NCBI GenBank assembly: GCA_020184695.1 | Contig: JAANOX010000014.1 | Location: forward strand, 62,001-126,000 | Origin: Histomonas meleagridis 2922-C6/04-290x | Lineage: Eukaryota > Protista > Parabasalia | Direction of reading: 5' to 3' | Length of the DNA: 64,000 bases | Shown here: positions 1,890 to 48,109 of the stretch, piece by piece | Numbering within the stretch: the first letter of the stretch is position 1 | Layout: each line of letters opens with the position of its first letter | The notes under the pieces: model-generated | Told to the model about the DNA's origin: nothing | Seen by the model: only the letters and a program-made list of their open reading frames with translations | The model's database searches: none | Program-made: the position numbers and the translations under genes

Positions 1890-4800
1890 TCAATGTATTA
1901 ACAATTGATCTTCATCATGCCTAATTACATTATTAAATTCATCATCAATATGTATTGTTTGCTTTTCGTTGTCTGATGAAGACTCAGAAAGGATTTCAGT
2001 AGTTTTGCTTGGAATTTTCTTACTTCTTCGAATTGTAAATATTATTATTCCAATGATCAATAAAACAGTGATAACCGAACCACAGATAATTCCTATTAAT
2101 GCATTTGTTGAAATCTTTTTAGTTGGCTGAGATTGAGTTTGATAATATGTAAACATTATCAAAGAATAATCTAAGTTATAGAAAGAATACTGAATAATTG
2201 TGTATTCATAATGAATTATTTCTGTAGAGATAAAAGAGTCAAGTGTATTATATAATAAGGAATGTGTTAAATACATTGTGTAAACAGAATATGATTGAGT
2301 TAAATATATATAAAATGTAAATGTATACGAATATGGATAAGTTATTATTGTATTTGACTTAGTGAATGTATTTGATTTAGTGAATGTATTTGATTTCGAA
2401 AATGTATTTGTAAATGTGTTTGTATATGTATTCGACTTTGTAAATGTGTGTGTTGACCATGGATATTGATCACATTCACCAAATGCTGTTCCTTTGGATA
2501 TGTTAAGTTCTCCAAATGTTTCATTTTGATATAAATCGGATGTCATAATATATTGATTTTCAATATTATCAAAAGCATTATCTGCTACATTTGGAGTTAT
2601 ATAACCTAAAAAGTAAATACATGTGAGATTGCTGCATTGTGTAAATGCTTCTTTTTCAATAGAATTCACATTTTGACCAATAATAACTGTTCCTAATGAA
2701 GAACAATATTGAAATGCACGAGATTCAATCCTTGTTACTGAATCAGGAATTGTTATGTTTGTTAATGATAAACAATAAGAAAAAGCATTATTCCCAATAG
2801 AATTCACATTTTGACCAATAATTACTGTTTCTAATGAGGAACAATATTGAAATGCACTAGATTCAAATGTTTCGACTGAATCAGGAATTGTTATATTTGT
2901 TAATAATGTGCAATAAGAAAATGCTGAATCTTTAATAGAATTCACATTTTGACCAATAATAACGATGCTTAAATTAGAACAATGTTGAAATACACTCTCT
3001 CCAATTGTTTCAACTGAATCAGGAATTGTTATATTTGTTAATGATGTGCAATAAGAGAATGCATAATTCCCAATATAACTTACATTTTGACCAACAATAA
3101 CTGTTCTTAATGAAGAACAATATTGAAATGCACGAGATTCAATCCTTGTTACTGAATCAGGAATTGTTATGTTTGTTAATGATAAACAATAAGAAAAAGC
3201 ATTATTCCCAATAGAATTCACATTTTGACCAATAATTACTGTTTCTAATGAGGAACAATATTGAAATGCACGAGATTCAATCCTTGTTACTGAATCAGGA
3301 ATTGTTATGTTTGTTAATGATAAACAATAAGAAAAAGCATTATTCCCAATAGAATTCACATTTTGACCAATAATTACTGTTTCTAATGAGGAACAATATT
3401 GAAATGCACCAGATTCAATCCTTGTTACTGAATCAGGAATTGTTATGTTTGTTAATGATAAACAATAAGAAAAAGCATTATTCCCAATAGAATTCACATT
3501 TTGACCAATAATTACTGTTTCTAATGAGGAACAATATTGAAATGCACCAGATTCAATCGTTGTTACTGAGTCAGGAATTGTTATGTTTATTAATGAGGAA
3601 CATTTAGAAAATGCTGAAGCTCCAATAGAATTTACTTTATCTCCAAAGATAACATTTTCTAAATTAATACATTCTTCAAAAGAATATGATCCAATTGTTG
3701 TTATATTTTCACCGATATAAACTATTTTTAATGTTGTCCACTGTTTAAATGCTGTATTTCCAATTTTCATAAGTGAATCTGAGATTTTTATTGTATCATT
3801 TAATCTTCCTAATGGATAATAAACAATTTCCGTATAATTTTTATCATAAAGAATTCCATCTCGTTCAGAATAATATGAATTATCTTGAGATACATTAATA
3901 AAATAAAGTTTAGTACAATTAGCAAATACATTTTGTTCAATAGTATAAACTGATTTAGGAATTGTAATAATTTGTAATGAAATACATGAAAAAAATGCAT
4001 ATTCACCAATAAAATTTACATTTTCTCCAATAATAATATTTTCTAATTTAATACATGAAGAAAATGCAGAATTTTGAATTGATGTAACAGAATTTGGAAT
4101 CGTTATATTTATCAATGAAGAACATGATGAAAATGCATTACTTCCAATCGTTATTACATTATTTCCAATAGCAACATCAATTAATTTAATACAATTAGAA
4201 AATGCATTACTTCCAATCGTTTCGACAGATTCACCAATAAATACTGTTTCAAGATTTTGACATTTATCAAAAGCATTGGACCCAATCGATATAATCGTAT
4301 TCCCTATATCAACAGAAATTAAAGAAGGCCATTCTGAAAATGAGTTGGAATATATTGTATTAATTCCTCCTTGAATTATGAGATATTTTGTATCCTGTTT
4401 ATATGTAGATCTTGTATTATAATCATTTAAATTAATTATTGTAAGTGTTTTAGTATTTCCATCATATGCTGAAAATATTTGTTCAAAAAAGAAAATGAAT
4501 AAAAGTGGTAAAATTTTAAATTTGCTTTTCTCTTTTGAAACAATATGAATAATTAATAATAAATAAGTTTTTAACATTAAAAATAAGATAAGAAAAACTA
4601 TAGCAATAAATAAAATATTTGACAAAATTTTTTTGCATACGAAAGAAATTAAATTTAAAGAATTTTGACTAACATGCTGAAAACCATGACAAAATGAACC
4701 ATTGATATTGGGAAGAGATATAACAGATTTTCTAGTTTCACATAAAATTTGAAGATATAAATCATATTTAGTTATAGTTATAATTTTTTGAACCAATGCA

Positions 4801-4898
4801 CCATCCTTTGAATAAAGGTTATTTAAAACATCTGGAATGTAGTGTAATGTTTGCATATACGTTAAAAATAACAGGATGCGCGGAGAAACACCTTTCAT
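1890..4898 (-). CDS. BspA-like (TpLRR/LRR_5) leucine-rich-repeat type I membrane surface protein
   Basis: Many 23-aa repeats of the form L..I.IP.SV..I...AF..C, a Thr/Ser-rich stalk (SNTFTK repeats), a C-terminal TM helix (ALIGIICGSVITVLLIIGIIIFTI) and a charged tail. The true start is probably downstream, e.g. ATG at 4577. Confidence 0.92.
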   Translation of the reverse strand: MKGVSPRILLFLTYMQTLHYIPDVLNNLYSKDGALVQKIITITKYDLYLQILCETRKSVISLPNINGSFCHGFQHVSQNSLNLISFVCKKILSNILFIAIVFLILFLMLKTYLLLIIHIVSKEKSKFKILPLLFIFFFEQIFSAYDGNTKTLTIINLNDYNTRSTYKQDTKYLIIQGGINTIYSNSFSEWPSLISVDIGNTIISIGSNAFDKCQNLETVFIGESVETIGSNAFSNCIKLIDVAIGNNVITIGSNAFSSCSSLINITIPNSVTSIQNSAFSSCIKLENIIIGENVNFIGEYAFFSCISLQIITIPKSVYTIEQNVFANCTKLYFINVSQDNSYYSERDGILYDKNYTEIVYYPLGRLNDTIKISDSLMKIGNTAFKQWTTLKIVYIGENITTIGSYSFEECINLENVIFGDKVNSIGASAFSKCSSLINITIPDSVTTIESGAFQYCSSLETVIIGQNVNSIGNNAFSYCLSLTNITIPDSVTRIESGAFQYCSSLETVIIGQNVNSIGNNAFSYCLSLTNITIPDSVTRIESRAFQYCSSLETVIIGQNVNSIGNNAFSYCLSLTNITIPDSVTRIESRAFQYCSSLRTVIVGQNVSYIGNYAFSYCTSLTNITIPDSVETIGESVFQHCSNLSIVIIGQNVNSIKDSAFSYCTLLTNITIPDSVETFESSAFQYCSSLETVIIGQNVNSIGNNAFSYCLSLTNITIPDSVTRIESRAFQYCSSLGTVIIGQNVNSIEKEAFTQCSNLTCIYFLGYITPNVADNAFDNIENQYIMTSDLYQNETFGELNISKGTAFGECDQYPWSTHTFTKSNTYTNTFTNTFSKSNTFTKSNTFTKSNTIITYPYSYTFTFYIYLTQSYSVYTMYLTHSLLYNTLDSFISTEIIHYEYTIIQYSFYNLDYSLIMFTYYQTQSQPTKKISTNALIGIICGSVITVLLIIGIIIFTIRRSKKIPSKTTEILSESSSDNEKQTIHIDDEFNNVIRHDEDQLLIH
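2700..3570 (-). repeat. 138-nt (46-aa, two-LRR) near-identical tandem units inside the BspA gene
   Basis: The anchor TATTGAAATG (or a one-base variant) recurs at 2707, 2845, 2983, 3121, 3259, 3397 and 3535, an exact 138-nt spacing. Confidence 0.9.
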
Positions 4899-5062: not shown

Positions 5063-5271
5063 GTGAATATATTATTATAGAATGAATAAATGTAATTAAT
5101 TAATTAATGAGTACTTATTGACATATTCTGATTTCATTCGAATAATTTTTGACGGAAAATATAAATCATTCAAATACAAATTGAATAAGAATTTTCCTTG
5201 AATTTCATTCTCCTTTCAATTTTTTCAATATCGCACAAAAATTCGTGAAAAGTAGAATAGTATGTCACTTT

Positions 5272-5451
5272 CTATTCCTGTAAAATCGTTCGTTTGAAGT
5301 TTCGAACTTTCAAATAACCTATTTGATGTCATTTTGAATTTTGAGAAAAGGGTATCATTCGATTTCTCTCACTGTAACGGAGCTAAAGGCGAATTTTCAG
5401 CAAAAATAGAACTCTCCATCAAAAAACAAAAAAAATTCACCTTCGACGGGA
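5272..5451 (-). repeat. Diverged copy of the tRNA-Lys 3' end plus the 5' end of the adjacent element ORF
   Basis: 5438-5451 is identical to 12552-12565 (TCCCGTCGAAGGTG on the minus strand). 5272-5437 aligns with 12388-12551 and translates as MESSIFAENSPLAPLQ*EKSNDTLFSKFKMTSNRLFESSKLQTNDFTGIE versus MESSIFAENSSLAPLQGEKSNDIFSLKFEFSSDRLFGNSKLQTNNFTGIE. Confidence 0.92.
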
Positions 5452-5577
5452 CTTGTTTATTCATTATCGTATGTTATTAGAGATATTATCTTTAATTATA
5501 GACGCGTCCGCCTTATTCTACTTCATTTTGACTCTTGTTTTATTCGTAAACCAAATCTCGTCGGTTTTTTGAGAACT

Positions 5578-5886
5578 TTATTGATTGTCATGTTGGGGAT
5601 GCCCTAACCCATCCTCAACATTATCGTCAACAAGTTCTTCTTGATTTACACCAACATCTTCTTGTAAATCATCGATTGAATCTTCTTCATCTGATGATGT
5701 TGGCTGAATGTTAATAGTAGTATCATTTGCTGCACATTATTCTCTTTAAAACTCTTATATAATAACAACATAGATTCTCTTAAAGCAGCTACTGAACATC
5801 TTTTTGCTACTAATCTCGCTGTTCTTTCATTATTATATAATAGTTTTAATTCATGAAATGTTTCTTCGGTAATTGCACCTAACGAG
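5578..5886 (-). pseudogene. C-terminal remnant of an RLE-like ORF with acidic tail
   Basis: SLGAITEETFHELKLLYNNERTARLVAKRCSVAALRESMLLLYKSFKENN, then a frameshift to AANDTTINIQPTSSDEEDSIDDLQEDVGVNQEELVDDNVEDGLGHPQHDNQ*. It is cut off upstream by the MULE TIR. Confidence 0.55.
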
Positions 5887-6545
5887 GGTAATACGTAACC
5901 TGTACGCACTTTTTGCGGTTATCGCCTCAATTTCCCACTTTTTGAACGGCCTGACATCCTAACCGTTCGGAAACACGAAAATACGAAACACATTAAAACA
6001 AATGTATGAATTAGAAAATTCTGAATATAACAAATTATAGTATATGCAGTACTTATTAGCATATTAAAATATTTTTGAAAAATAATCTAGTTTTATCTAA
6101 ATATAAGCATTAGAAAAAAATTGTCTTATTTTATAAAATAAATATTATGAATCGAAAGTACATAATGAAAAACATATAACAGTATATTTTGTTTTTTTAA
6201 ATATTTTGTTTATAAGCTTGTTTTTAAGTGTTTTGTTTCGCATATTTTTGAAAGAGTATTCAAATTCAATGGGTATTCAATGATTTCTGAGTGTTGTTTT
6301 TTCCCTCTGAAAATATGGTGCTCAAATTCTGAGAGCATTCAATTCCATTTATTATAAATTAAAATTAAAATATCTTGATATACTATTTACTTTAATCAAC
6401 AAAAAATGAATATTATGTTGTAATATTATATATTAGTAAATTTAATATAATATAATATTGCAATTAATAGAATTCTTGTGCATTCATTGTTCAATCTTTG
6501 TTTGCTCATTGTTTGTTCTCATTTATTCTGGTTTGTTTTTTTAAT
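5887..6545 (+). repeat. Left long TIR of the MULE
   Basis: Reverse-complement match to 8697-9359 with scattered mismatches, e.g. GTACGCACTTTTTGCGGTTATCGCCTCAATTTCCCAC at both ends. Confidence 0.95.
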
Positions 6546-7490
6546 TTATTCATATATATACATATTTATTCATTTTATATTTTTATTTGTTCATCGTTTA
6601 TTCTTATTTATTCTTTGATTATTTTCATTAATCCAGTGATTATATTCATTATTTTATTGTTTATTCTTGTTTATTCATTGATCATATTTATTAATTCATT
6701 GATAATTCATCATTTATTCTTATTTGTTCATTATTTTTCTCAAATATTCATTGTTTATTCTTGTTTATTCATTAATTAATCTGTTTATTCATAATTTATT
6801 CTCATCAATTCATTTGTAATATTTTTTCTCATTGTTATTCATCTTTTATTCATGTTTTAGATGTTTAAGATGTTTTATCATTTTTACCCAATAATCATTA
6901 ATGTTAAATATATTTTTTTATTATTATTCACTAAATTTTAATGTTTAATGCATATTCTCATTGTTATTCATGATGTGTTCATAGTTGATATGTTTTCACA
7001 ATATTATTCAATACATATTCATGCAATATATTATATCATTATTTTTTTATTGTTTATTAATATTTTATATATTTTTTATTATCATTATTTTTCATGTTCA
7101 TATGATTTTTTCTTTTTATTCTTTGTTTTTGATTATGAATAGATTTTATCATTGTTTTGCATATTTTATTAATGTTTAATATGTTTTCTCGTTTCCATTT
7201 CTCCTTTATTTATGTTCAATATTTTTTTAATTTATTTTTTATTTCATATAATGCACTTTTTATTGTTCTGATTCATTATTTTTTCATTGTGTGTGTTTGT
7301 TTTCTCTTTCTTTCATTACTTGTAATGTTAATGCGTTTTTTCTTTACTAATATAATCTTTTTTATCTTTCAATATTATATTTTTTTAATATTTTTTGATA
7401 TTTTTTATTATTATTAATTCGTATTTCTATTTTTAATTCTTATTCAAGTGTTTAATCTTTTTTAATTATCTTAATTTTTCTATTGTTAAT
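6545..7490. repeat. Low-complexity T-rich subterminal region (TTATTC/TTGTT-type degenerate repeats)
   Basis: Visible degenerate short repeats, with an A-rich mirror at ~8480-8700. Accounts for the spurious hydrophobic ORFs in the track. Confidence 0.7.
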
Positions 7491-7498
7491 TTTCATTT

Positions 7499-8471
7499 TT
7501 ATTTCTTGGCGATTTCTTTATTGTTTATTATGATATAATTGCTTTTTGTTATTTCAAATATTGGAACAATAATTTTAATATTCTTAAATATATTAGTATT
7601 ATCTAAGATTGAAAAATATGTTATATTTTCTTTGCTGATAGCATTGTCAAATAAAGGATATTTCCTAGAATTATCAATGCATCTACAAAATTTAGTTACC
7701 TCATTATGTTCTATTTCTTTAGTAAAATCAGGATAAATATGGTTTTCAGATAATTTTGAATTATTATATGTATTTTTATATTCACCTTCCATTTTAACAA
7801 TTTCTGAATAGAAGCTTAAAATTGTAGGACACTTCATTAGTTTGGAGTTAATTTTTTTATTGAAGCTTTCATTTATATTATGAGTTGCTCTGTGACTCAT
7901 AATTTTTTCACTAATATTCCAATCATTATTTATATCAAATTTTTTTGTATAAGTTGAAATAAAGTAATCAACAAACTCTGAAGATTCTTTTGAAAAATAT
8001 GATATCTTTGGAAGAAATAAAATTACCTTTTTAGCACATTCTATGTCAATAAGTGGTAATAATTTTATTAATTTATAAAGTTGCTGAGTAAAAAAACGAA
8101 ATCTTTTGGATAAGATTGATAATAATTTTTCGCGAATAGCTTTGCAAAAATGAAAATAACATAATTGTATAGAGTTTGAATTTGTTACAAATATGTTCTT
8201 TATTGCATTGATTTCAGCTAATTCAAAATCACGAATGAATTTTACATTTTGATGAAACTTAATATTAAGGTATTTTTAGTGCATTTAAATATGTTTTGAA
8301 TGCTAATAAATATGTTTTGCTATTTTTGTTTGGCAAAATCAAATATAATAATGGAATATTTAAAAAACGAGATATTCCAATGAAAATGCATACCTGATAA
8401 AATCCATTCGGCGCTGGATGGAAAGTACCATCTATGCCAATTATTTTGCATTCGCATACACGTTGTAACAT
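7499..8471 (-). pseudogene. MULE DDE transposase remnant (frameshifted, N-terminus missing)
   Basis: IIGIDGTFHPAPNGFYQV...IPLLYLILPNKNSKTY (8265-8471); after a frameshift, RDFELAEINAIKNIF...LCYFHFCKAIREKL (~8110-8240); then THNINESFNKKIN (7499-7900 ORF). This gives the D-D-E triad plus the CxxH motif. Confidence 0.9.
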
Positions 8472-8696
8472 AAAATGAGAATTATAAACAAGAATTAGTG
8501 ATAATAAATATAAGCAAACAAATGAATAACTAAATGAGAATAATCAATGAAAAATCAAGAACAAACAATAAACAAAAGATAAATAAACAAGAATAAGCAA
8601 TAATTAAGCAGAATAAATTATGAATAAATGATAATAAACGAGAACAAACAAGAATTATTTGAAAAAATGAACAAGAATAAGCAAGAATAAATATAA

Positions 8697-9359
8697 ATGA
8701 ATTAAAAAAACAAACCAGAATAAATGAGAACAAACAATGAGCAAACAAAGATTGAACAATGAATGCACAAGAATTCTATTAATTGCAATATTATATTATA
8801 TTAAATTTACTAATATATAATATTACAACATAATATTCATTTTTTGTTGATTAAAGTAAATAGTATATCAAGATATTTTAATTTTAATTTATAATAAATG
8901 GAATTGAATGCTCTCAGAATTTGAGCACCATATTTTCAGAGGGAAAAAACAACACTCAGAAATCATTGAATACCCATTGAATTTGAATACTCTTTCAAAA
9001 ATATGCGAAACAAAACACTTAAAAACAAGCTTATAAACAAAATATTTAAAAAAACAAAATATACTGTTATATGTTTTTCATTATGTACTTTCGATTCATA
9101 ATATTTATTTTAAAAAATAAGACAATTTTTTTCTAATGCTTATATCTCGATAAAAATAGAATATTTTTCAAAAATATTTCAATATGCTAATAAGTACTGC
9201 ATATACTATAATTTGTTATATTCAGAATTTTCTAATTCATACATTTGTTTTAATGTGTTTCGTATTTTCGTGTTTCCGAACGGTTAGGATGTCAGGCCGT
9301 TCAAAAAGTGGGAAATTGAGGCGATAACCGCAAAAAGTGCGTACAGATTACGCATTTCC
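8697..9359 (-). repeat. Right long TIR of the MULE
   Basis: Inverted copy of 5887-6545. Confidence 0.95.
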
Positions 9360-9388
9360 TGTGTTTTATATTTTAATACTATAATCCT

Positions 9389-12300
9389 TTAAATATAACT
9401 AGTAATTTCTGATAAATTCCTAATCATATTGTTTTGTTTTCTAATTGTTTCTTTTTTTCTATCCTTGATTTTGTTCTTATTAATAGATTTACCTAACATC
9501 TTTTCTAAAGGAATATGTAAAGTTTTTCTAATAGTTTTTCTAATTAATAAATTCATTTTGGCTAATCCTCCTTCAAAAATTATCCATTCTGTTTCACTTT
9601 CATTTATTGGTGTACATTTCTTTAATATTGAAATTATTTTATTTCTCATACATTCTTTGATTGGGATAATAAGTTTTTGTCTATAGTTTTTAGTAAGTTT
9701 AGGTAAATGAATCTCATTTTGTTATTCTATTTCTACCCTATTTAACCATTTTCTACATTTTATTAGTATATCATTTCATTCTTCTGAAATTATTTGTTGT
9801 TCTTCTTGTGTCATTTTTATATTTTCTACTTGTTGTCGTTCCTGATTTATATTTTGTTGTTCTTCTTGATTATTTAATTGTTCTCGATTATTATTTTGTA
9901 GTATATCTTGATTATTTGATTGTTCTTGTTGAATGACAGTTTGATTTTGTATAAAAATATTATTATTTCTATTAATTTCTTTATTATTTTGTTGATTGAT
10001 ATTATTATTTCTATTATTGAAGTGATTATTATTGTTATCATCTGTTAATTGTTCTTGAGCTTTAATTTCATTTTCAATCTCATCAATTTGTTTTTGTAAC
10101 AGAATTCTGAATATTGTGGATTTAATTATAATCTTTTGTTTTGGGATAATTGTTCCTTTTATTCTTGAATCACTATGCATTGAAGATGCATGTAATTTGA
10201 AGTTTTTTTCATTAGCTGTAATTGTCTTTTTACAATAACCACATAATAAACCAATTGTTTCTTTCATTAATTCTTTGATATTTGGTGTTCTATTAACTTG
10301 ATTAATTCAATATTTAATAGTCGCCCAAATCCATCCTATTTATGATTTTTTATCAACTATATATTTGTGTTTGGTTTTCATATGTGAAGAAAATGAACCC
10401 TGATTCATAGTAAAATAATCACAATTTGGACAGAAGCAAAAATAATAATTCGAATGATAACTTTGATGTTGGTCTTGTAAATTAACTTGTTCCCAATAAT
10501 TATTCATTAAACTTAAAAAATTTAAAAATTCTAACATTGTACAACCTGGAAATGTTTTATTATGTACTTGTTTCTCATGATATTTCAAATGAGGTACACA
10601 TGTAAATGCTTCTCCATCTCCTTGTGTACATACAAAAGGTCCTACACCTGGCCAACCTTTTTCGAATGCTATAATATTTAAAATTGGTATTTTAAATCTA
10701 TTATTATTGCACATGAATAAGTTCTCGTTTAAATCATTATTCTTCCATTTATTAATTACTAATTTAATTTCTTCTTTAGTATTCGCATTCCTAATATCAT
10801 TTAATAAATTTTCTGGTGTTAAATCTTCTTCATTATTAATATTATTATTATTATTATTTCCATTATTGTGATTATTATTATTTAAATTGATGTTATTGAT
10901 TTGATTTTGATTTTGATTTTGATTTTCTTGTGGAATATTATTGTTATTGTATCCTAAGAATGTAATATTTGAGTTTAGTTGATTTTGATTATTATTGTTA
11001 TTTTGATTTTGAGTTTCATCATTATTTAGATTTATATTAATATTAATATTTGGTAAATTATAGTTTGGGATTGGAAAAATGATATCTTTTTCTACAAATT
11101 TAATTTTTGGTACTTCTATAATTTGTTCATTAACTCTAATCTGTGGAATATTGAATGGCACAATTTCTTCATTGTAATAAGGTATAACAACATTGATTTC
11201 TTCATTATTGATTTTGAAATCTGGAATATCAATAAGGTATTCTTCAACTTTTATTACTGGTAAATCACAATTTATGTTTTATGTGTAATAGAGAAATTAG
11301 GAACATTAACATTAACATTAACTGGATATTGTTTAACTTGTAGAACATGAGAAATGTTCTTATTTGGTCTAATTTTGTTATTTAAGAATTGTAATGTGTC
11401 AGGTCTGATTGATAATGTTCTATTTATAATTCGAAAAGTATCTGGTGGTAAAATTGGACCTCGATAAGAACATATATTTGAGATCTCAATATTGATGTTA
11501 TTTTGTTCGATGATTAATATCCAATATGGTAAATCAATTTCAGTAAAATCTTTGTTTTCATAATGTTCATTAATCAAATAAATTTCTCTCCGAGCATCTG
11601 GATTAATATTATTGAATATTCCAAAATCAACTTGTGTTTTTAATGAATTTAATGCTGTCGGTAATTTTCCGTAAGTTTTTGTCCATGAAAAGATTAACGT
11701 CCAAAATAATCCAACGGTTTGTAAAGAATTCATAATTATTTCTGAACTGTGCGTGTGATTTACATGGTTGATTAATTTAAAATTGTCAGAAATAATTTTA
11801 TAACAATTTGGAAACGGACAGAATCTTTTAAAATTTTTTGATTATATAATGTACTTGTTTTTAGTCAATAATCTTTGTATGATTCTTTCGTGAAAGAGTA
11901 ATTCTTGATTAGGGTCGATACCATGTTCTTCTGACAAGTGTTTTAACAATATTTGAAAGTTTTCTGTGAAAAAATTACATTCTGGAACTAATGAACAACA
12001 AAATGGTTCGGGTAATGGGATATCACGAAATTCATTTAATTTGAATAATTGAGAAATTGGGAAATTTAAAAAATTATAAATTAATAATAAATTTTGTTGT
12101 AACCAAATGTTAGGCTATGGTATTCGTCTCTTAATTGCTTTGATAATAATTCTTTTAATTTCTTCTTTGTTGGAAAAATCTTTATTAATTATATAATTTT
12201 GTAAAAAGTTTTGTGATGTTCGATCTGTAATAATTTCTTTGTTATCTCTGTGATAATTTTCATTAATATCCCATATATTAGTCTTATCTTGTAATACATG

Positions 12301-12534
12301 GTCGAACTTTAAAATATAAATATCTTCATAATTATTCGTAATTATATATTCGTTTCCTGTTGATTGTAATCTAGAGGTATGATCCTCTATTCCTGTAAAA
12401 TTGTTAGTCTGAAGTTTTGAATTTCCGAATAATCTATCTGATGAAAATTCGAATTTTAAGGAGAAGATATCATTCGATTTCTCTCCCTGTAACGGAGCTA
12501 AAGACGAATTCTCAGCAAAAATAGAACTCTCCAT
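9389..12534 (-). pseudogene. Degenerate ~1000-codon multi-C2H2 zinc-finger ORF (N-terminal half of the retroelement protein)
   Basis: Track ORFs 12115-12732 (from ATG 12534), 11272-11733, 10340-11161, 9776-10267 and 9389-9649 join through single stops or frameshifts. Fingers: CSLVPECNFFTENFQILLKHLSEEH, CPFPNCYKLF/SDNFKLINHVNHTH, CPNCDYFTMNQGSFSSHMKTKH, CGYCKKTITANEKNFKLHASSMH. Confidence 0.8.
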
Positions 12535-12551
12535 CAAAAAACAAAAAAATT

Positions 12552-12624
12552 CACCTTCGACGGGATTCGAACCCGCAACCCCAGGATTAAAAGTCCTATG
12601 CTCTAACCGTTGAGCTACGAAGGT
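12552..12624 (-). tRNA. tRNA-Lys(UUU)
   Basis: ACCTTCG/CGAAGGT acceptor stem, TAGGA-CT-TTT-AA-TCCTG anticodon arm, GGTTCGAATCCC T-arm; 73 nt followed by a T-tract terminator. Confidence 0.97.
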
Positions 12625-12864
12625 TTCTGGAATATATTTGAATATATATATTATAATCGATATTATACTTGATCTCATATTTTTATTATTATATTTATTT
12701 ATCTTATTAACCTCAAATAATTTACCGAACAATAAAAATATACTTAAAATAATATATGTTCAAAACATATATTCATTTTGTGTAATTCAGAAACAAATAT
12801 ATCATTCAATTTTTTGATTAAGAGTTATCAATTTATTTTAAATTGAATTAACGAATGTTGAAAG

Positions 12865-47358: not shown

Positions 47359-47934
47359 GTGATATGATGTATGGATTGAATGGGCGAACGTTTAAATATT
47401 TTGAAGATATATTTAGGGTTTTGCAGAATGTGATGGATGATTCGACAAGATTTTGTAAAAAAAAGAATTTAAATCAAGAAAATTTTCTGTTAGGATAGTG
47501 GTAAAGGGGATTAATTAGAAAAAAGAAGAAGTTTGATGAAAATGACCAAAAAAAATTAACAATGACATACAATAAATTCAATATTTTACATTTACCGTCA
47601 AAATATTTGATTGTTGTGTTAAGGACCACTTAACCACGAAGAAGTTGATGAATATTATCTTAAAAGGTGTTGTGATAATATTTCTTGAAGTTTTTCTTTG
47701 TCATCATTTTAAGATATTTTTTAAATTTCATGATTTAGGAAGTCTTCAATATAATTCTTATGGAGTTTTTAAGAGAAAAATTAGCTCTTCTGAATTTTGT
47801 TTTCTGGATGTATAAAAAGAATAACTTTTATATTTGGAGTCACACTTCACAACGATTCAACAAATTGAAGAAACTAAGAACCTTAAGATAAAATTTAATT
47901 ATCATCAATATTAATCGAAAAATGAAAAACAGCT

Positions 47935-48007
47935 GCCTGCGTAGCATAGTGGTTATTGCGTTCGCCTTGTAAGCGAAAGGTCGGCGGTTCGACTCCGCTC
48001 GCAGGCA
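47935..48007 (+). tRNA. tRNA-Thr(UGU)
   Basis: GCCTGCG/CGCAGGC acceptor stem, TTCGC-CT-TGT-AA-GCGAA anticodon arm, GGTTCGACTCC T-arm. Confidence 0.97.
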
Positions 48008-48109
48008 AAACTTTTTATTTTTTAAATTTGTTTCAACTACAAAATCTATCATTATATTTTATTGCAATTATGTTATTTTACATTATTAGTAAATTAACAT
48101 CAAACAAAT

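What the first reader, a model, noticed from the sequence alone, without database searches (positions are those of the whole stretch)
5438..12624. Element inserted at the 3' end of tRNA-Lys(UUU) with a 14-nt duplication that leaves the tRNA intact
Seen: an intact tRNA (12552-12624), then ~7.1 kb of element, then an exact repeat of the last 14 tRNA nucleotides (T-stem 3' strand plus acceptor, 5438-5451). The element has multi-C2H2 N-terminal coding and an RLE-like C-terminus in the same orientation as the tRNA. Known: RLE non-LTR retrotransposons (R2, NeSL, CRE/SLACS, Utopia) are sequence-specific for multicopy RNA genes, and some make long TSDs. I do not recall a tRNA-3'-end-specific RLE family in parabasalids. 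Inference: a tRNA-Lys-targeted retrotransposon family that nicks in the T-loop.
Basis: partly seen in the sequence, partly recalled or inferred. Interest (0 to 1): 0.8.

Follow-up and report, generated by a model that had tools for sequence, protein, structure and literature searches.

The report
tRNA-Lys-targeting retrotransposon, broken copy
This is a dead copy of an R2-like jumping gene that always inserts at one exact position in the lysine tRNA gene and rebuilds the gene's end as it lands; the kind is already known from one tRNA-Pro-specific family in Trichomonas, but this family and its target are new.

Summary
An intact tRNA-Lys(UUU) lies at 12552-12624 (-). An exact copy of its last 14 nt lies at 5438-5451, with 7.1 kb of element between them.

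The interpretation also holds. All eight 5' ends of this family in the genome abut tRNA-Lys(UUU); one abuts a decayed relic. All four 3' ends read ...AATAAACAA(G/A)|TCCCGTCGAAGGTG followed by a locus-specific flank. Five tRNA-Lys genes are empty. Full-length copies (6.7 kb) encode C2H2 fingers, a reverse transcriptase and an R2-type CCHC plus restriction-like endonuclease.

Corrections:
- The repeat is really 181 bp: the 14 nt plus 167 bp of an older, truncated copy stacked behind.
- In the window copy, 2.74 kb holding the RT and the nuclease catalytic motifs has been replaced by a MULE-like DNA transposon with 840-bp inverted repeats. The DDE remnant there is a guest, not the element's own enzyme.

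A sister family (49% aa identity) uses the same T-loop position in tRNA-Arg(ACG). Metagenomic relatives show the same junction layout.

Precedent: NeSL-1_TV of Trichomonas vaginalis is tRNA-Pro-specific (PMC4640811). The scan has already noted sister families at other tRNAs in this genome.

Verdict: real, correctly read, a new member of a known kind.

The parts
12552..12624 (-). Intact tRNA-Lys(UUU), the target gene. Its 3' end was rebuilt by the insertion.
   Evidence: ARAGORN and Rfam tRNA at 71.9 bits. It is identical to two empty tRNA-Lys(UUU) genes.
12535..12551 (-). Element leader AATTTTTTTGTTTTTTG, which starts directly after the tRNA discriminator. It is a run of Ts that should act as the pol III terminator for the rebuilt tRNA (inferred).
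   Evidence: Present in 7/7 copies (95% pairwise identity) and different from each copy's own 3' flank. The Arg family has a similar leader.
9361..12534 (-). 5' half of the single giant ORF, now a pseudogene. It begins MESSIFAENS, carries an N-terminal region without known relatives and five C2H2-like finger motifs, and includes an N/Q-rich low-complexity stretch. It has several in-frame stops and frameshifts.
   Evidence: Stop-to-stop translation. Sub-threshold C2H2 Pfam hits. About 90% identity to L009, L010 and L011.
5887..9359 (.). Nested MULE-like DNA transposon remnant. Its inverted repeats are 8521-9359 and 5887-6700 (840 bp, 92% identity). It stands where 2.74 kb of the retrotransposon (RT plus nuclease catalytic motifs) should be.
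   Evidence: The inverted-repeat sequence occurs at 10 or more other loci, independent of the retrotransposon.
7502..8543 (-). MULE-type DDE transposase pseudogene, frameshifted near 8270.
   Evidence: Weak Pfam MULE hit (E 0.009). Relatives at 37-39% aa identity on C225, C170, C273 and C242 carry PF10551 above its cut-off exactly beside the homologous stretch.
5578..5894 (-). Last ~105 codons of the retrotransposon ORF (the conserved ..VVSSLGAI.. tail downstream of the nuclease motifs) and the stop codon.
   Evidence: tblastn to the L011 ORF, residues 772-877, at 89-92% identity. The tail is nearly invariant in alignment A1.
5452..5577 (-). 3' UTR ending ...AATGAATAAACAAG, with no poly(A) or repeat tail.
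   Evidence: The terminal AATAAACA motif is shared with the Arg family and with metagenomic relatives.
5438..5451 (-). 14-nt duplicate of tRNA positions 60-73 (target-site duplication).
   Evidence: The same junction is seen in 4/4 copies that have a 3' end.
5268..5437 (-). Remnant of an older copy: the leader plus the first ~150 nt of the ORF. It is truncated at about 5268 and marks a second hit on the same tRNA gene.
   Evidence: 88% identity to 12386-12551. 86-92% identity to the 5' ends of the other copies. No other part of that copy is found in the window or 7 kb upstream.

Best explanation
The 7.1-kb insert is a defective copy of a site-specific non-LTR retrotransposon of the restriction-like-endonuclease (R2/NeSL) type. 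Its only target is the tRNA-Lys(UUU) gene. The full element is about 6.7 kb and holds one ORF of roughly 2,100-2,200 codons. That ORF encodes an N-terminal region with five C2H2-like fingers, a reverse transcriptase, a CCHC knuckle and a PD..E..K nuclease. Proposed mechanism (inferred from the junctions and from what is established for R2): the nuclease nicks the antisense strand between tRNA positions 59 and 60 in the T-loop. That 3' OH primes reverse transcription from the RNA end ...AAUAAACAAG. The sense strand is then opened 14 bp further on, exactly after the discriminator base. Positions 60-73 are therefore duplicated, the upstream tRNA copy stays whole, and the element's T-rich leader replaces the native pol III terminator. 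Because the target is regenerated it can be hit again, which explains the 167-bp remnant of an older copy behind the duplication. Later, a MULE-like DNA transposon replaced the RT and nuclease core of this copy. Shown here: target specificity, junction positions, domain content and the nested element. Inferred: order of the nicks, terminator function and continued tRNA function.
For: 8/8 family 5' ends lie directly after tRNA-Lys(UUU) or its decayed relic, and the upstream flanks are unrelated. 4/4 3' ends join TCCCGTCGAAGGTG and then a unique T-rich flank. All 17 genomic occurrences of the 14-mer are accounted for. Five tRNA-Lys(UUU) genes are empty. One of them (L015) shares 1.2 kb of upstream flank with a filled site, and the homology ends about 15 nt after the tRNA. 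RVT_1 scores 2e-36. R2 proteins are the best solved relatives of both the RT (5.6e-44, against 2e-26 for L1) and the C-terminal profile (6.9e-31). tRNA copies at filled sites are 99.6% identical while the adjacent element DNA is 94.6% identical, consistent with the rebuilt genes still being used. A sister family shows the same geometry at tRNA-Arg(ACG). Metagenomic relatives show 'AATAAAC.. + 14-18 nt tRNA-like 3' end + T run + ATG' between head-to-tail copies, and one has an uninterrupted 2,042-aa ORF.
Against: No copy of the Lys family that I retrieved has an open full-length frame; the best, L011, has one stop and four frameshifts upstream of an 877-aa open RT-nuclease frame. Activity is therefore historical. 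Three copies with 5' ends lack 3' ends (C154, C79, and C237 at a contig end), whereas non-LTR elements are usually 5'-truncated. The order and position of the nicks are read from junctions only. Identity of the filled tRNA genes could also be maintained by gene conversion. RNA evidence was inconclusive.
Confidence: 0.88

Rival explanations
1. Same element and target, but the intact upstream tRNA is not the product of two nicks 14 bp apart. Instead the RNA template carries tRNA sequence at its 5' end, for example as a co-transcript with the donor's tRNA. The cDNA end then pairs with the target tRNA, so the tRNA 3' part is rewritten from the donor, as proposed for R2 with its 28S co-transcripts.
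For: The 5' junction lies exactly at the tRNA end in both the Lys and Arg families. Earlier scan notes report intact tRNAs with other duplication lengths (unchecked). The filled tRNA on C29 is a hybrid of the two gene types, C5 as in type 2 and A59 as in type 1. All 7 filled genes carry A59, while 3 of 5 empty ones carry G59 (Fisher p 0.045).
Against: The T8-G-T6 run directly after the tRNA should stop pol III, so a tRNA-element co-transcript needs another polymerase, and upstream flanks share no promoter. The hybrid gene is a single case that one T>C change would also explain. The A59 bias may simply reflect nuclease preference at the cut site. No ribozyme or other processing signal was found.
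Confidence: 0.25
2. The tRNA gene is part of the repeat unit: a segmental duplication, or an element that carries its own tRNA. In that case nothing is targeted.
For: Similarity between copies starts exactly at tRNA position 1. One pair of loci on C79 does share upstream flank.
Against: The 3' junctions carry only the last 14 nt of the tRNA, followed by unique native-looking terminator flanks. Identical tRNA genes exist without the element. One member of the C79 pair lacks the element. A related family does the same at a different tRNA.
Confidence: 0.03
3. The unit is an integrative DNA element that recombines through a 14-nt core shared with the tRNA 3' end (a tyrosine-recombinase or Crypton-like element, or a Dada-like DDE transposon), and the DDE gene in the window is its own enzyme.
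For: The layout 'tRNA - element - tRNA 3' fragment' looks like tRNA-borne integrative elements of bacteria. A DDE remnant lies inside the window copy.
Against: Full-length copies encode RT plus an R2-type nuclease and no recombinase or DDE. The MULE-like part has its own 840-bp inverted repeats, occurs elsewhere on its own, and is absent from the other copies.
Confidence: 0.02

Closest known systems
NeSL-1_TV of Trichomonas vaginalis (Repbase; Kojima & Jurka 2015, PMC4640811)
   Same: It is a restriction-like-endonuclease non-LTR retrotransposon of a parabasalid, stated to be specific for one tRNA gene (tRNA-Pro). Its place among the NeSL/HERO-like lineages is unresolved.
   Different: The target here is tRNA-Lys(UUU), with tRNA-Arg(ACG) for the sister family. 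I could not read its junctions (the S6 Fig text is illegible at that point) or obtain its sequence. Whether it uses the same T-loop position, makes a 14-bp duplication, or belongs to the same clade is therefore untested.
R2 (28S rDNA-specific; solved structures 8gh6, 8ibw, 9dou, 9nl2, 9nl3)
   Same: Single ORF with N-terminal C2H2 fingers, RT, CCHC knuckle and PD..D/E..K nuclease. It has a precise 3' junction without an A tail, a multicopy RNA gene as target, and is the best sequence match among solved structures.
   Different: R2 has a different target and disrupts the 28S gene, whereas this element rebuilds its target. The ORF here is about twice as long. No Myb domain was detected, and no HDV-like ribozyme was found. 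In my tree the family falls outside the animal sequences labelled R2.
LIN15_SM (tRNA-Arg) and LIN25_SM (tRNA-Glu) of planarians (R5/LIN lineage, PMC4640811)
   Same: They are RLE-type non-LTR retrotransposons specific for single tRNA genes.
   Different: Their 3' junctions, as far as S6 Fig can be read, lie in the body of the tRNA around the anticodon arm. Those junction lines show no rebuilt tRNA. They come from a different phylum.
Utopia (U2 snRNA gene-specific, NeSL clade)
   Same: It is an RLE element targeting a small multicopy RNA gene. It has a precise 3' boundary and a family-dependent duplication of 0 to 20 bp (PMC4640811).
   Different: The target is a different gene, and regeneration of a working gene copy has not been reported as a constant feature.
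Dada DNA transposons (PMC3706591, PMC8869645)
   Same: They insert at fixed positions inside tRNA or snRNA genes.
   Different: They are DDE transposase elements with inverted repeats and short duplications. The element here encodes RT plus RLE instead.
Dictyostelium TRE/DGLT-A and yeast Ty1/Ty3 (own knowledge)
   Same: They use tRNA genes as safe landing marks.
   Different: They insert at a distance upstream or downstream through contacts with pol III factors. They do not insert at a fixed nucleotide inside the gene and have no RLE.

Membership tests
RLE-bearing site-specific non-LTR retrotransposon (R2/NeSL grade) | Reverse transcriptase domain of the non-LTR type | tested here: met
   PF00078 at 2e-36 in L011. 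R2 proteins are the best solved match at 5.6e-44. The domain is absent from the window copy itself.
RLE-bearing site-specific non-LTR retrotransposon (R2/NeSL grade) | C-terminal CCHC knuckle followed by a PD..(D/E)..K restriction-like nuclease | tested here: met
   C, C, H, C, RH, PD and K..KY are invariant in 32 sequences. The profile hits the R2 C-terminal region at 6.9e-31. A single-sequence search found nothing. The window copy keeps only the tail.
RLE-bearing site-specific non-LTR retrotransposon (R2/NeSL grade) | N-terminal zinc fingers in the same ORF | tested here: met
   Five C..C..H..H motifs are readable in the translation. Pfam C2H2 models hit only below their cut-offs, except FOXP-CC at 31.9 bits.
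RLE-bearing site-specific non-LTR retrotransposon (R2/NeSL grade) | Insertion at one fixed sequence with a precise 3' junction | tested here: met
   8/8 5' ends and 4/4 3' ends lie at tRNA-Lys(UUU).
R2 clade in the strict sense | Target in 28S rDNA, and grouping with R2 in RT phylogeny | tested here: not met
   The target is a tRNA gene. In the tree, the family and its metagenomic kin form a separate clade (support 100) from the animal sequences that sources name R2. No curated R2/NeSL/CRE references were available, so clade placement remains open.
NeSL-1_TV-like tRNA-specific parabasalid elements | Specificity for one tRNA gene in a parabasalid genome | tested here: met
   The precedent is PMC4640811.
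NeSL-1_TV-like tRNA-specific parabasalid elements | Sequence relationship to NeSL-1_TV, and the same insertion position | not testable with these tools
   The Repbase sequence is not at hand, and the S6 Fig text is illegible for that family.
MULE DNA transposon (nested element only) | MULE-type DDE domain | tested here: inconclusive
   The window piece scores E 0.009, below the cut-off, because a frameshift splits the domain. Its 37-39% aa relatives carry PF10551 above the cut-off at the matching place.
MULE DNA transposon (nested element only) | Long terminal inverted repeats and a 8-10 bp duplication | tested here: inconclusive
   840-bp inverted repeats at 92% identity are present. No duplication can be seen, because 2.74 kb of host sequence is missing between the two ends.
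Dada or tyrosine-recombinase integrative elements | Own DDE transposase or tyrosine recombinase | tested here: not met
   Full-length copies encode only the finger-RT-RLE ORF.

The most novel reading that the evidence does not exclude
The Lys family may be one branch of a whole radiation of parabasalid RLE retrotransposons. Each branch would be specialised on one tRNA species, and all would cut the invariant T-loop at 59/60, duplicate positions 60-73 and bring their own pol III terminator. The host gene would then survive and the site would renew itself, giving head-to-tail stacks. If so, target choice would reside in an exchangeable finger region sitting on a constant cutting geometry. That would be a natural series of re-targeted R2-like integrases that has not been described in print.
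Probability: 0.35. Interest if true: 0.75.

Novelty: new member of a known kind. Interest (0 to 1): 0.55.

Why it matters
Site-specific R2-type elements are being developed as tools to write genes into safe genomic sites, and how they change targets is an open question. This genome holds related families (49% aa identity in RT plus nuclease) that use the same nucleotide position in different tRNA genes while leaving the gene intact. That gives a natural comparison for mapping which protein parts read the target. It also gives an example of a retrotransposon that limits harm by rebuilding its target and supplying the terminator. For annotation of this genome, it explains why tRNA-Lys genes are followed by long broken ORFs and short tRNA 3' fragments.

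Tried and rejected
- **Rfam scan.** A scan of 5200-12800 at E up to 1 found only the tRNA. There was no HDV-like or other ribozyme at the 5' end.
- **3' UTR fold.** Folding the 3' UTR gave no structure beyond shuffled controls (z 0.10).
- **Expression.** The run search gave four small contig-only runs of uncertain type. A few short low-depth contigs match the window copy exactly (9875-10054 and 11087-11316). They cannot show transcription, starts or ends. No verdict.
- **Empty versus filled site on C79.** The upstream flank and tRNA of L015 match the filled site L006 at 93%. The downstream flank of L015 was not found within 17 kb after the element, so the pair is informative on the 5' side only.
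- **Metagenomic relatives.** ARAGORN found no whole tRNA on eight metagenomic contigs. Five of them (three families) do show tRNA-like 3' fragments at the junctions. L034-L036 show neither.
- **Nuclease region against solved structures.** A single-sequence search of the nuclease region found nothing. The profile search succeeded.
- **NeSL-1_TV junctions.** They could not be read from the paper's supplement.
- **Rejected readings.** A 181-bp target duplication is rejected because the other copies lack the 167 bp at their 3' side. A duplication extending into the T run is rejected because each copy's leader differs from its own 3' flank.


Full report
**Observation**

ARAGORN finds tRNA-Lys(UUU) at 12552-12624 on the minus strand, and Rfam agrees at 71.9 bits. 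Read on the minus strand, the gene ends ...GGGTTCGAA TCCCGTCGAAGGTG. It is followed by AATTTTTTTGTTTTTTG and then an ATG that opens MESSIFAENS. At 5438-5451 the 14 nt TCCCGTCGAAGGTG recur exactly, preceded by ...AATGAATAAACAAG. These 14 nt are T60 of the T-loop, the 3' strand of the T-stem, the 3' strand of the acceptor stem and the discriminator.

The 14-mer occurs 17 times in the 43.1-Mb assembly, and its reversed control occurs 0 times. Twelve occurrences are tRNA-Lys(UUU) genes. Four are element 3' junctions. One lies 17 nt from the start of contig C155 and is probably a fifth junction cut by the assembly.

**Correction to the repeat**

The direct repeat is 181 bp, not 14 nt: 12386-12565 matches 5271-5451 at 88% identity. 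After the 14 nt, the sequence at 5437 downwards repeats the element's own leader and its first ~150 nt of coding sequence, then breaks off near 5268. No other part of that second copy exists in the window or in the 7 kb before it. The three other 3' junctions in the genome do not carry this extra piece. It is therefore not part of the duplication. It is the stump of an older copy, which means the same tRNA gene was hit twice.

**The family and its target**

A DNA search of the assembly and a protein search with the N-terminal 308 residues find seven copies with a 5' end: the window, C29, C61, C153, C154, C237 and C79. In all seven, a tRNA-Lys(UUU) gene stands directly before the leader.

- Similarity between loci begins at tRNA position 1.
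- Mean pairwise identity is 41% in the 300 bp upstream, 99.6% in the tRNA, 95% in the leader and 94.6% in the next 1.3 kb.
- An eighth, much older copy (about 75% identity, C61 near 558 kb) is preceded by a decayed but recognisable tRNA-Lys.
- Four copies have a 3' end. All read ...AATAAACAA(G/A) | TCCCGTCGAAGGTG, followed by a different T-rich flank at each locus.
- Five further tRNA-Lys(UUU) genes are empty and have ordinary T-run flanks.
- One empty gene (L015) shares 1.2 kb of upstream flank with the filled gene on the same contig. That homology stops about 15 nt after the tRNA.

This is the pattern of a target-specific insertion, not of a duplicated block that happens to contain a tRNA.

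**What the element encodes**

The three full-length copies are 6.69-6.76 kb long. They translate, through a few stops and frameshifts, into one long frame. The best copy, on C153 (L011), has an uninterrupted 877-residue frame covering the enzymatic half.

- Pfam finds RVT_1 in that frame at 2e-36.
- Solved R2 proteins are the best matches (5.6e-44), well ahead of LINE-1 ORF2p (2e-26).
- An alignment of the C-terminal region with 31 relatives has invariant C, C, H, C, then RH, PD, and K..KY. As a profile it matches the zinc-knuckle plus restriction-like-endonuclease part of R2 at 6.9e-31.
- The N-terminal half carries five C..C..H..H motifs, which Pfam mostly sees only below its cut-offs, and long N/Q-rich stretches.
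- A metagenomic relative has the same layout as one unbroken 2,042-residue ORF. That ORF starts 15 nt after a tRNA-like fragment plus T run.

The element is therefore an RLE-type non-LTR retrotransposon with a single, unusually long ORF.

**The window copy is broken in a specific way**

Between 9361 and 5894 the window has 3.47 kb that the other copies lack. It is missing the 2.74 kb that they have there, namely the RT and the nuclease motifs.

- The foreign piece is bounded by 840-bp inverted repeats (8521-9359 and 5887-6700, 92% identity). Their outer ends coincide with the breakpoints.
- Between the repeats lies a frameshifted ORF (8543-7502) with a weak Pfam MULE hit (E 0.009).
- Its relatives elsewhere in the genome (37-39% aa identity, some in open frames of 556-568 residues) carry PF10551 above the cut-off exactly beside the homologous stretch.
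- The repeat arms occur at ten or more other loci without the retrotransposon.

I read this as a MULE-like DNA transposon that landed in the element, with loss of host sequence. No target duplication can be seen.

**How it most likely works**

This part is inferred from the junctions and from the established R2 mechanism.

1. The 3' junction places the primer nick on the antisense strand between tRNA positions 59 and 60. Copies that end in ..CAAA leave one or two bases of ambiguity.
2. The 5' junction places the sense-strand opening 14 bp downstream, exactly after the discriminator. Positions 60-73 are duplicated and the upstream gene stays complete.
3. The first 17-18 nt of the element are a conserved T8-G-T6 run. 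It differs from each copy's own 3' flank, so the element brings it along. It should terminate pol III for the rebuilt gene.
4. The near-perfect conservation of the filled tRNA genes beside 5% divergent element DNA fits continued use of those genes, although gene conversion could do the same.
5. A regenerated target can be hit again. This accounts for the stump at 5268-5437 and for the head-to-tail arrays in metagenomic relatives.

A variant mechanism remains open. In it, the tRNA 3' part is copied from a donor-derived RNA 5' extension rather than duplicated by staggered cuts. Two observations point that way. All seven filled genes carry A59, while three of five empty ones carry G59 (p 0.045). 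The filled gene on C29 combines C5 of the second type with A59 of the first. That is one case only.

**Relatives**

The genome holds at least 40 loci with related RT-nuclease frames at 34-51% identity. I could examine one other family, on C227 (49% identity).

- Its 3' end reads ...GCTAATAAACAG | TCCTGGGTGGTACA plus a T run. Those are the last 14 nt of tRNA-Arg(ACG).
- 270 bp further on, an intact tRNA-Arg(ACG) is followed by AATTTTTTTCATTTTTTG and the start of another copy.
- The word search found 1,114 proteins at E 1e-10 or better. The closest (30-46% identity) all come from metagenomes and carry no informative name.
- Three such families show 'AATAAAC.. + 14-18 nt that look like a tRNA 3' end + T run + ATG'.
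- In a quick tree, the Lys and Arg families and 26 metagenomic proteins form one clade (support 100), apart from arthropod and nematode proteins that sources label R2. The members with checked tRNA-like junctions fall in both main subclades. No curated clade references were available, so the tree does not decide between R2 and NeSL.

Earlier notes of this scan list first-reader reports of similar elements in the same genome at tRNA-Asn, Ile, Cys, Met, Arg(ACG) and Tyr. One follow-up calls the organism Histomonas. I did not check those notes, apart from meeting an Arg(ACG) family myself.

**Comparison with what is known**

Kojima and Jurka (2015, PMC4640811) state that NeSL-1_TV of Trichomonas vaginalis is tRNA-Pro-gene-specific. 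They also state that planarian LIN15_SM and LIN25_SM are specific for tRNA-Arg and tRNA-Glu. As far as the supplement can be read, the planarian junctions lie inside the tRNA body. The NeSL-1_TV junctions were illegible.

I found no paper on non-LTR elements of Histomonas, and none on a T-loop-specific, target-rebuilding family. The library does not include Repbase Reports.

This is therefore a new family with a new target within a known kind. The constant 59/60 cut, the 14-bp duplication and the donated terminator may or may not already be known for NeSL-1_TV.

**Verdict**

The copy in the window is an old, dead one carrying a nested DNA transposon. Novelty: new member of a known kind. Interest is moderate to good (0.55), mainly because related families re-aim the same cutting geometry at different tRNA genes.

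Noticed in passing
window 5887-9359: A MULE-like DNA transposon remnant with 840-bp inverted repeats (92% identity) and internal short repeats. Its termini read GG(A/G)(A/T)AAT(G/A)CGTAA(T/C)CTGTACGCAC. It replaced 2.74 kb of the retrotransposon. Its arms occur at 10 or more other loci.
   Followed up: partly
L009 (C29) versus L017-L019; window 12552-12624: There are two tRNA-Lys(UUU) gene types: T5/A59 and C5/G59. In the second type, C5 mispairs with A68. All filled genes have A59. The filled gene on C29 is a C5/A59 hybrid, which might mean that the tRNA 3' part is rewritten from the donor.
   Followed up: partly
L020 4860-5480 (C227): A sister family (49% aa identity) is joined to the last 14 nt of tRNA-Arg(ACG). 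A second intact tRNA-Arg(ACG) lies 270 bp away and is itself followed by another copy. The first ~35 nt after the 14-mer again resemble the element's own leader.
   Followed up: yes
L030 6100-6180; L031 6520-6570; L029 6090-6140: Metagenomic relatives stand head to tail, with only a 14-18 nt tRNA-like 3' fragment and a T run between copies. All share a terminal AATAAAC motif. L031 6567-12692 is an open 2,042-aa ORF.
   Followed up: partly
G000 C154, C79, C237 (L004, L006, L005): Three family copies keep the 5' end but lack the 3' end, and no 5'-truncated copy was seen. This is the opposite of the usual non-LTR pattern. C79 is heavily rearranged and C237 ends at a contig end.
   Followed up: no
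G000 C155:18-31: The 17th occurrence of the 14-mer lies 17 nt from a contig start. It is probably the missing 3' junction of a copy broken by the assembly (C237 or C29). It could not be fetched.
   Followed up: no
window 1890-4898 (-): A 1,002-aa BspA-type leucine-rich-repeat surface protein gene (LRR_5, 6.9e-179) with a C-terminal membrane anchor lies directly downstream of the truncated older copy.
   Followed up: no
window 47934-48008 (+): tRNA-Thr(UGU) has an ordinary T-run flank and no element behind it, so it is an empty site.
   Followed up: yes
window 5500-5530; L020 4895-4915: A short G+C-rich motif (GGCGGACGCGTC in the Lys family, GCGGGAGCGC in the Arg family) sits 50-80 nt before the 3' end in otherwise A+T-rich UTRs. 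It may be a protein-binding hairpin. The fold was not significant on its own.
   Followed up: partly
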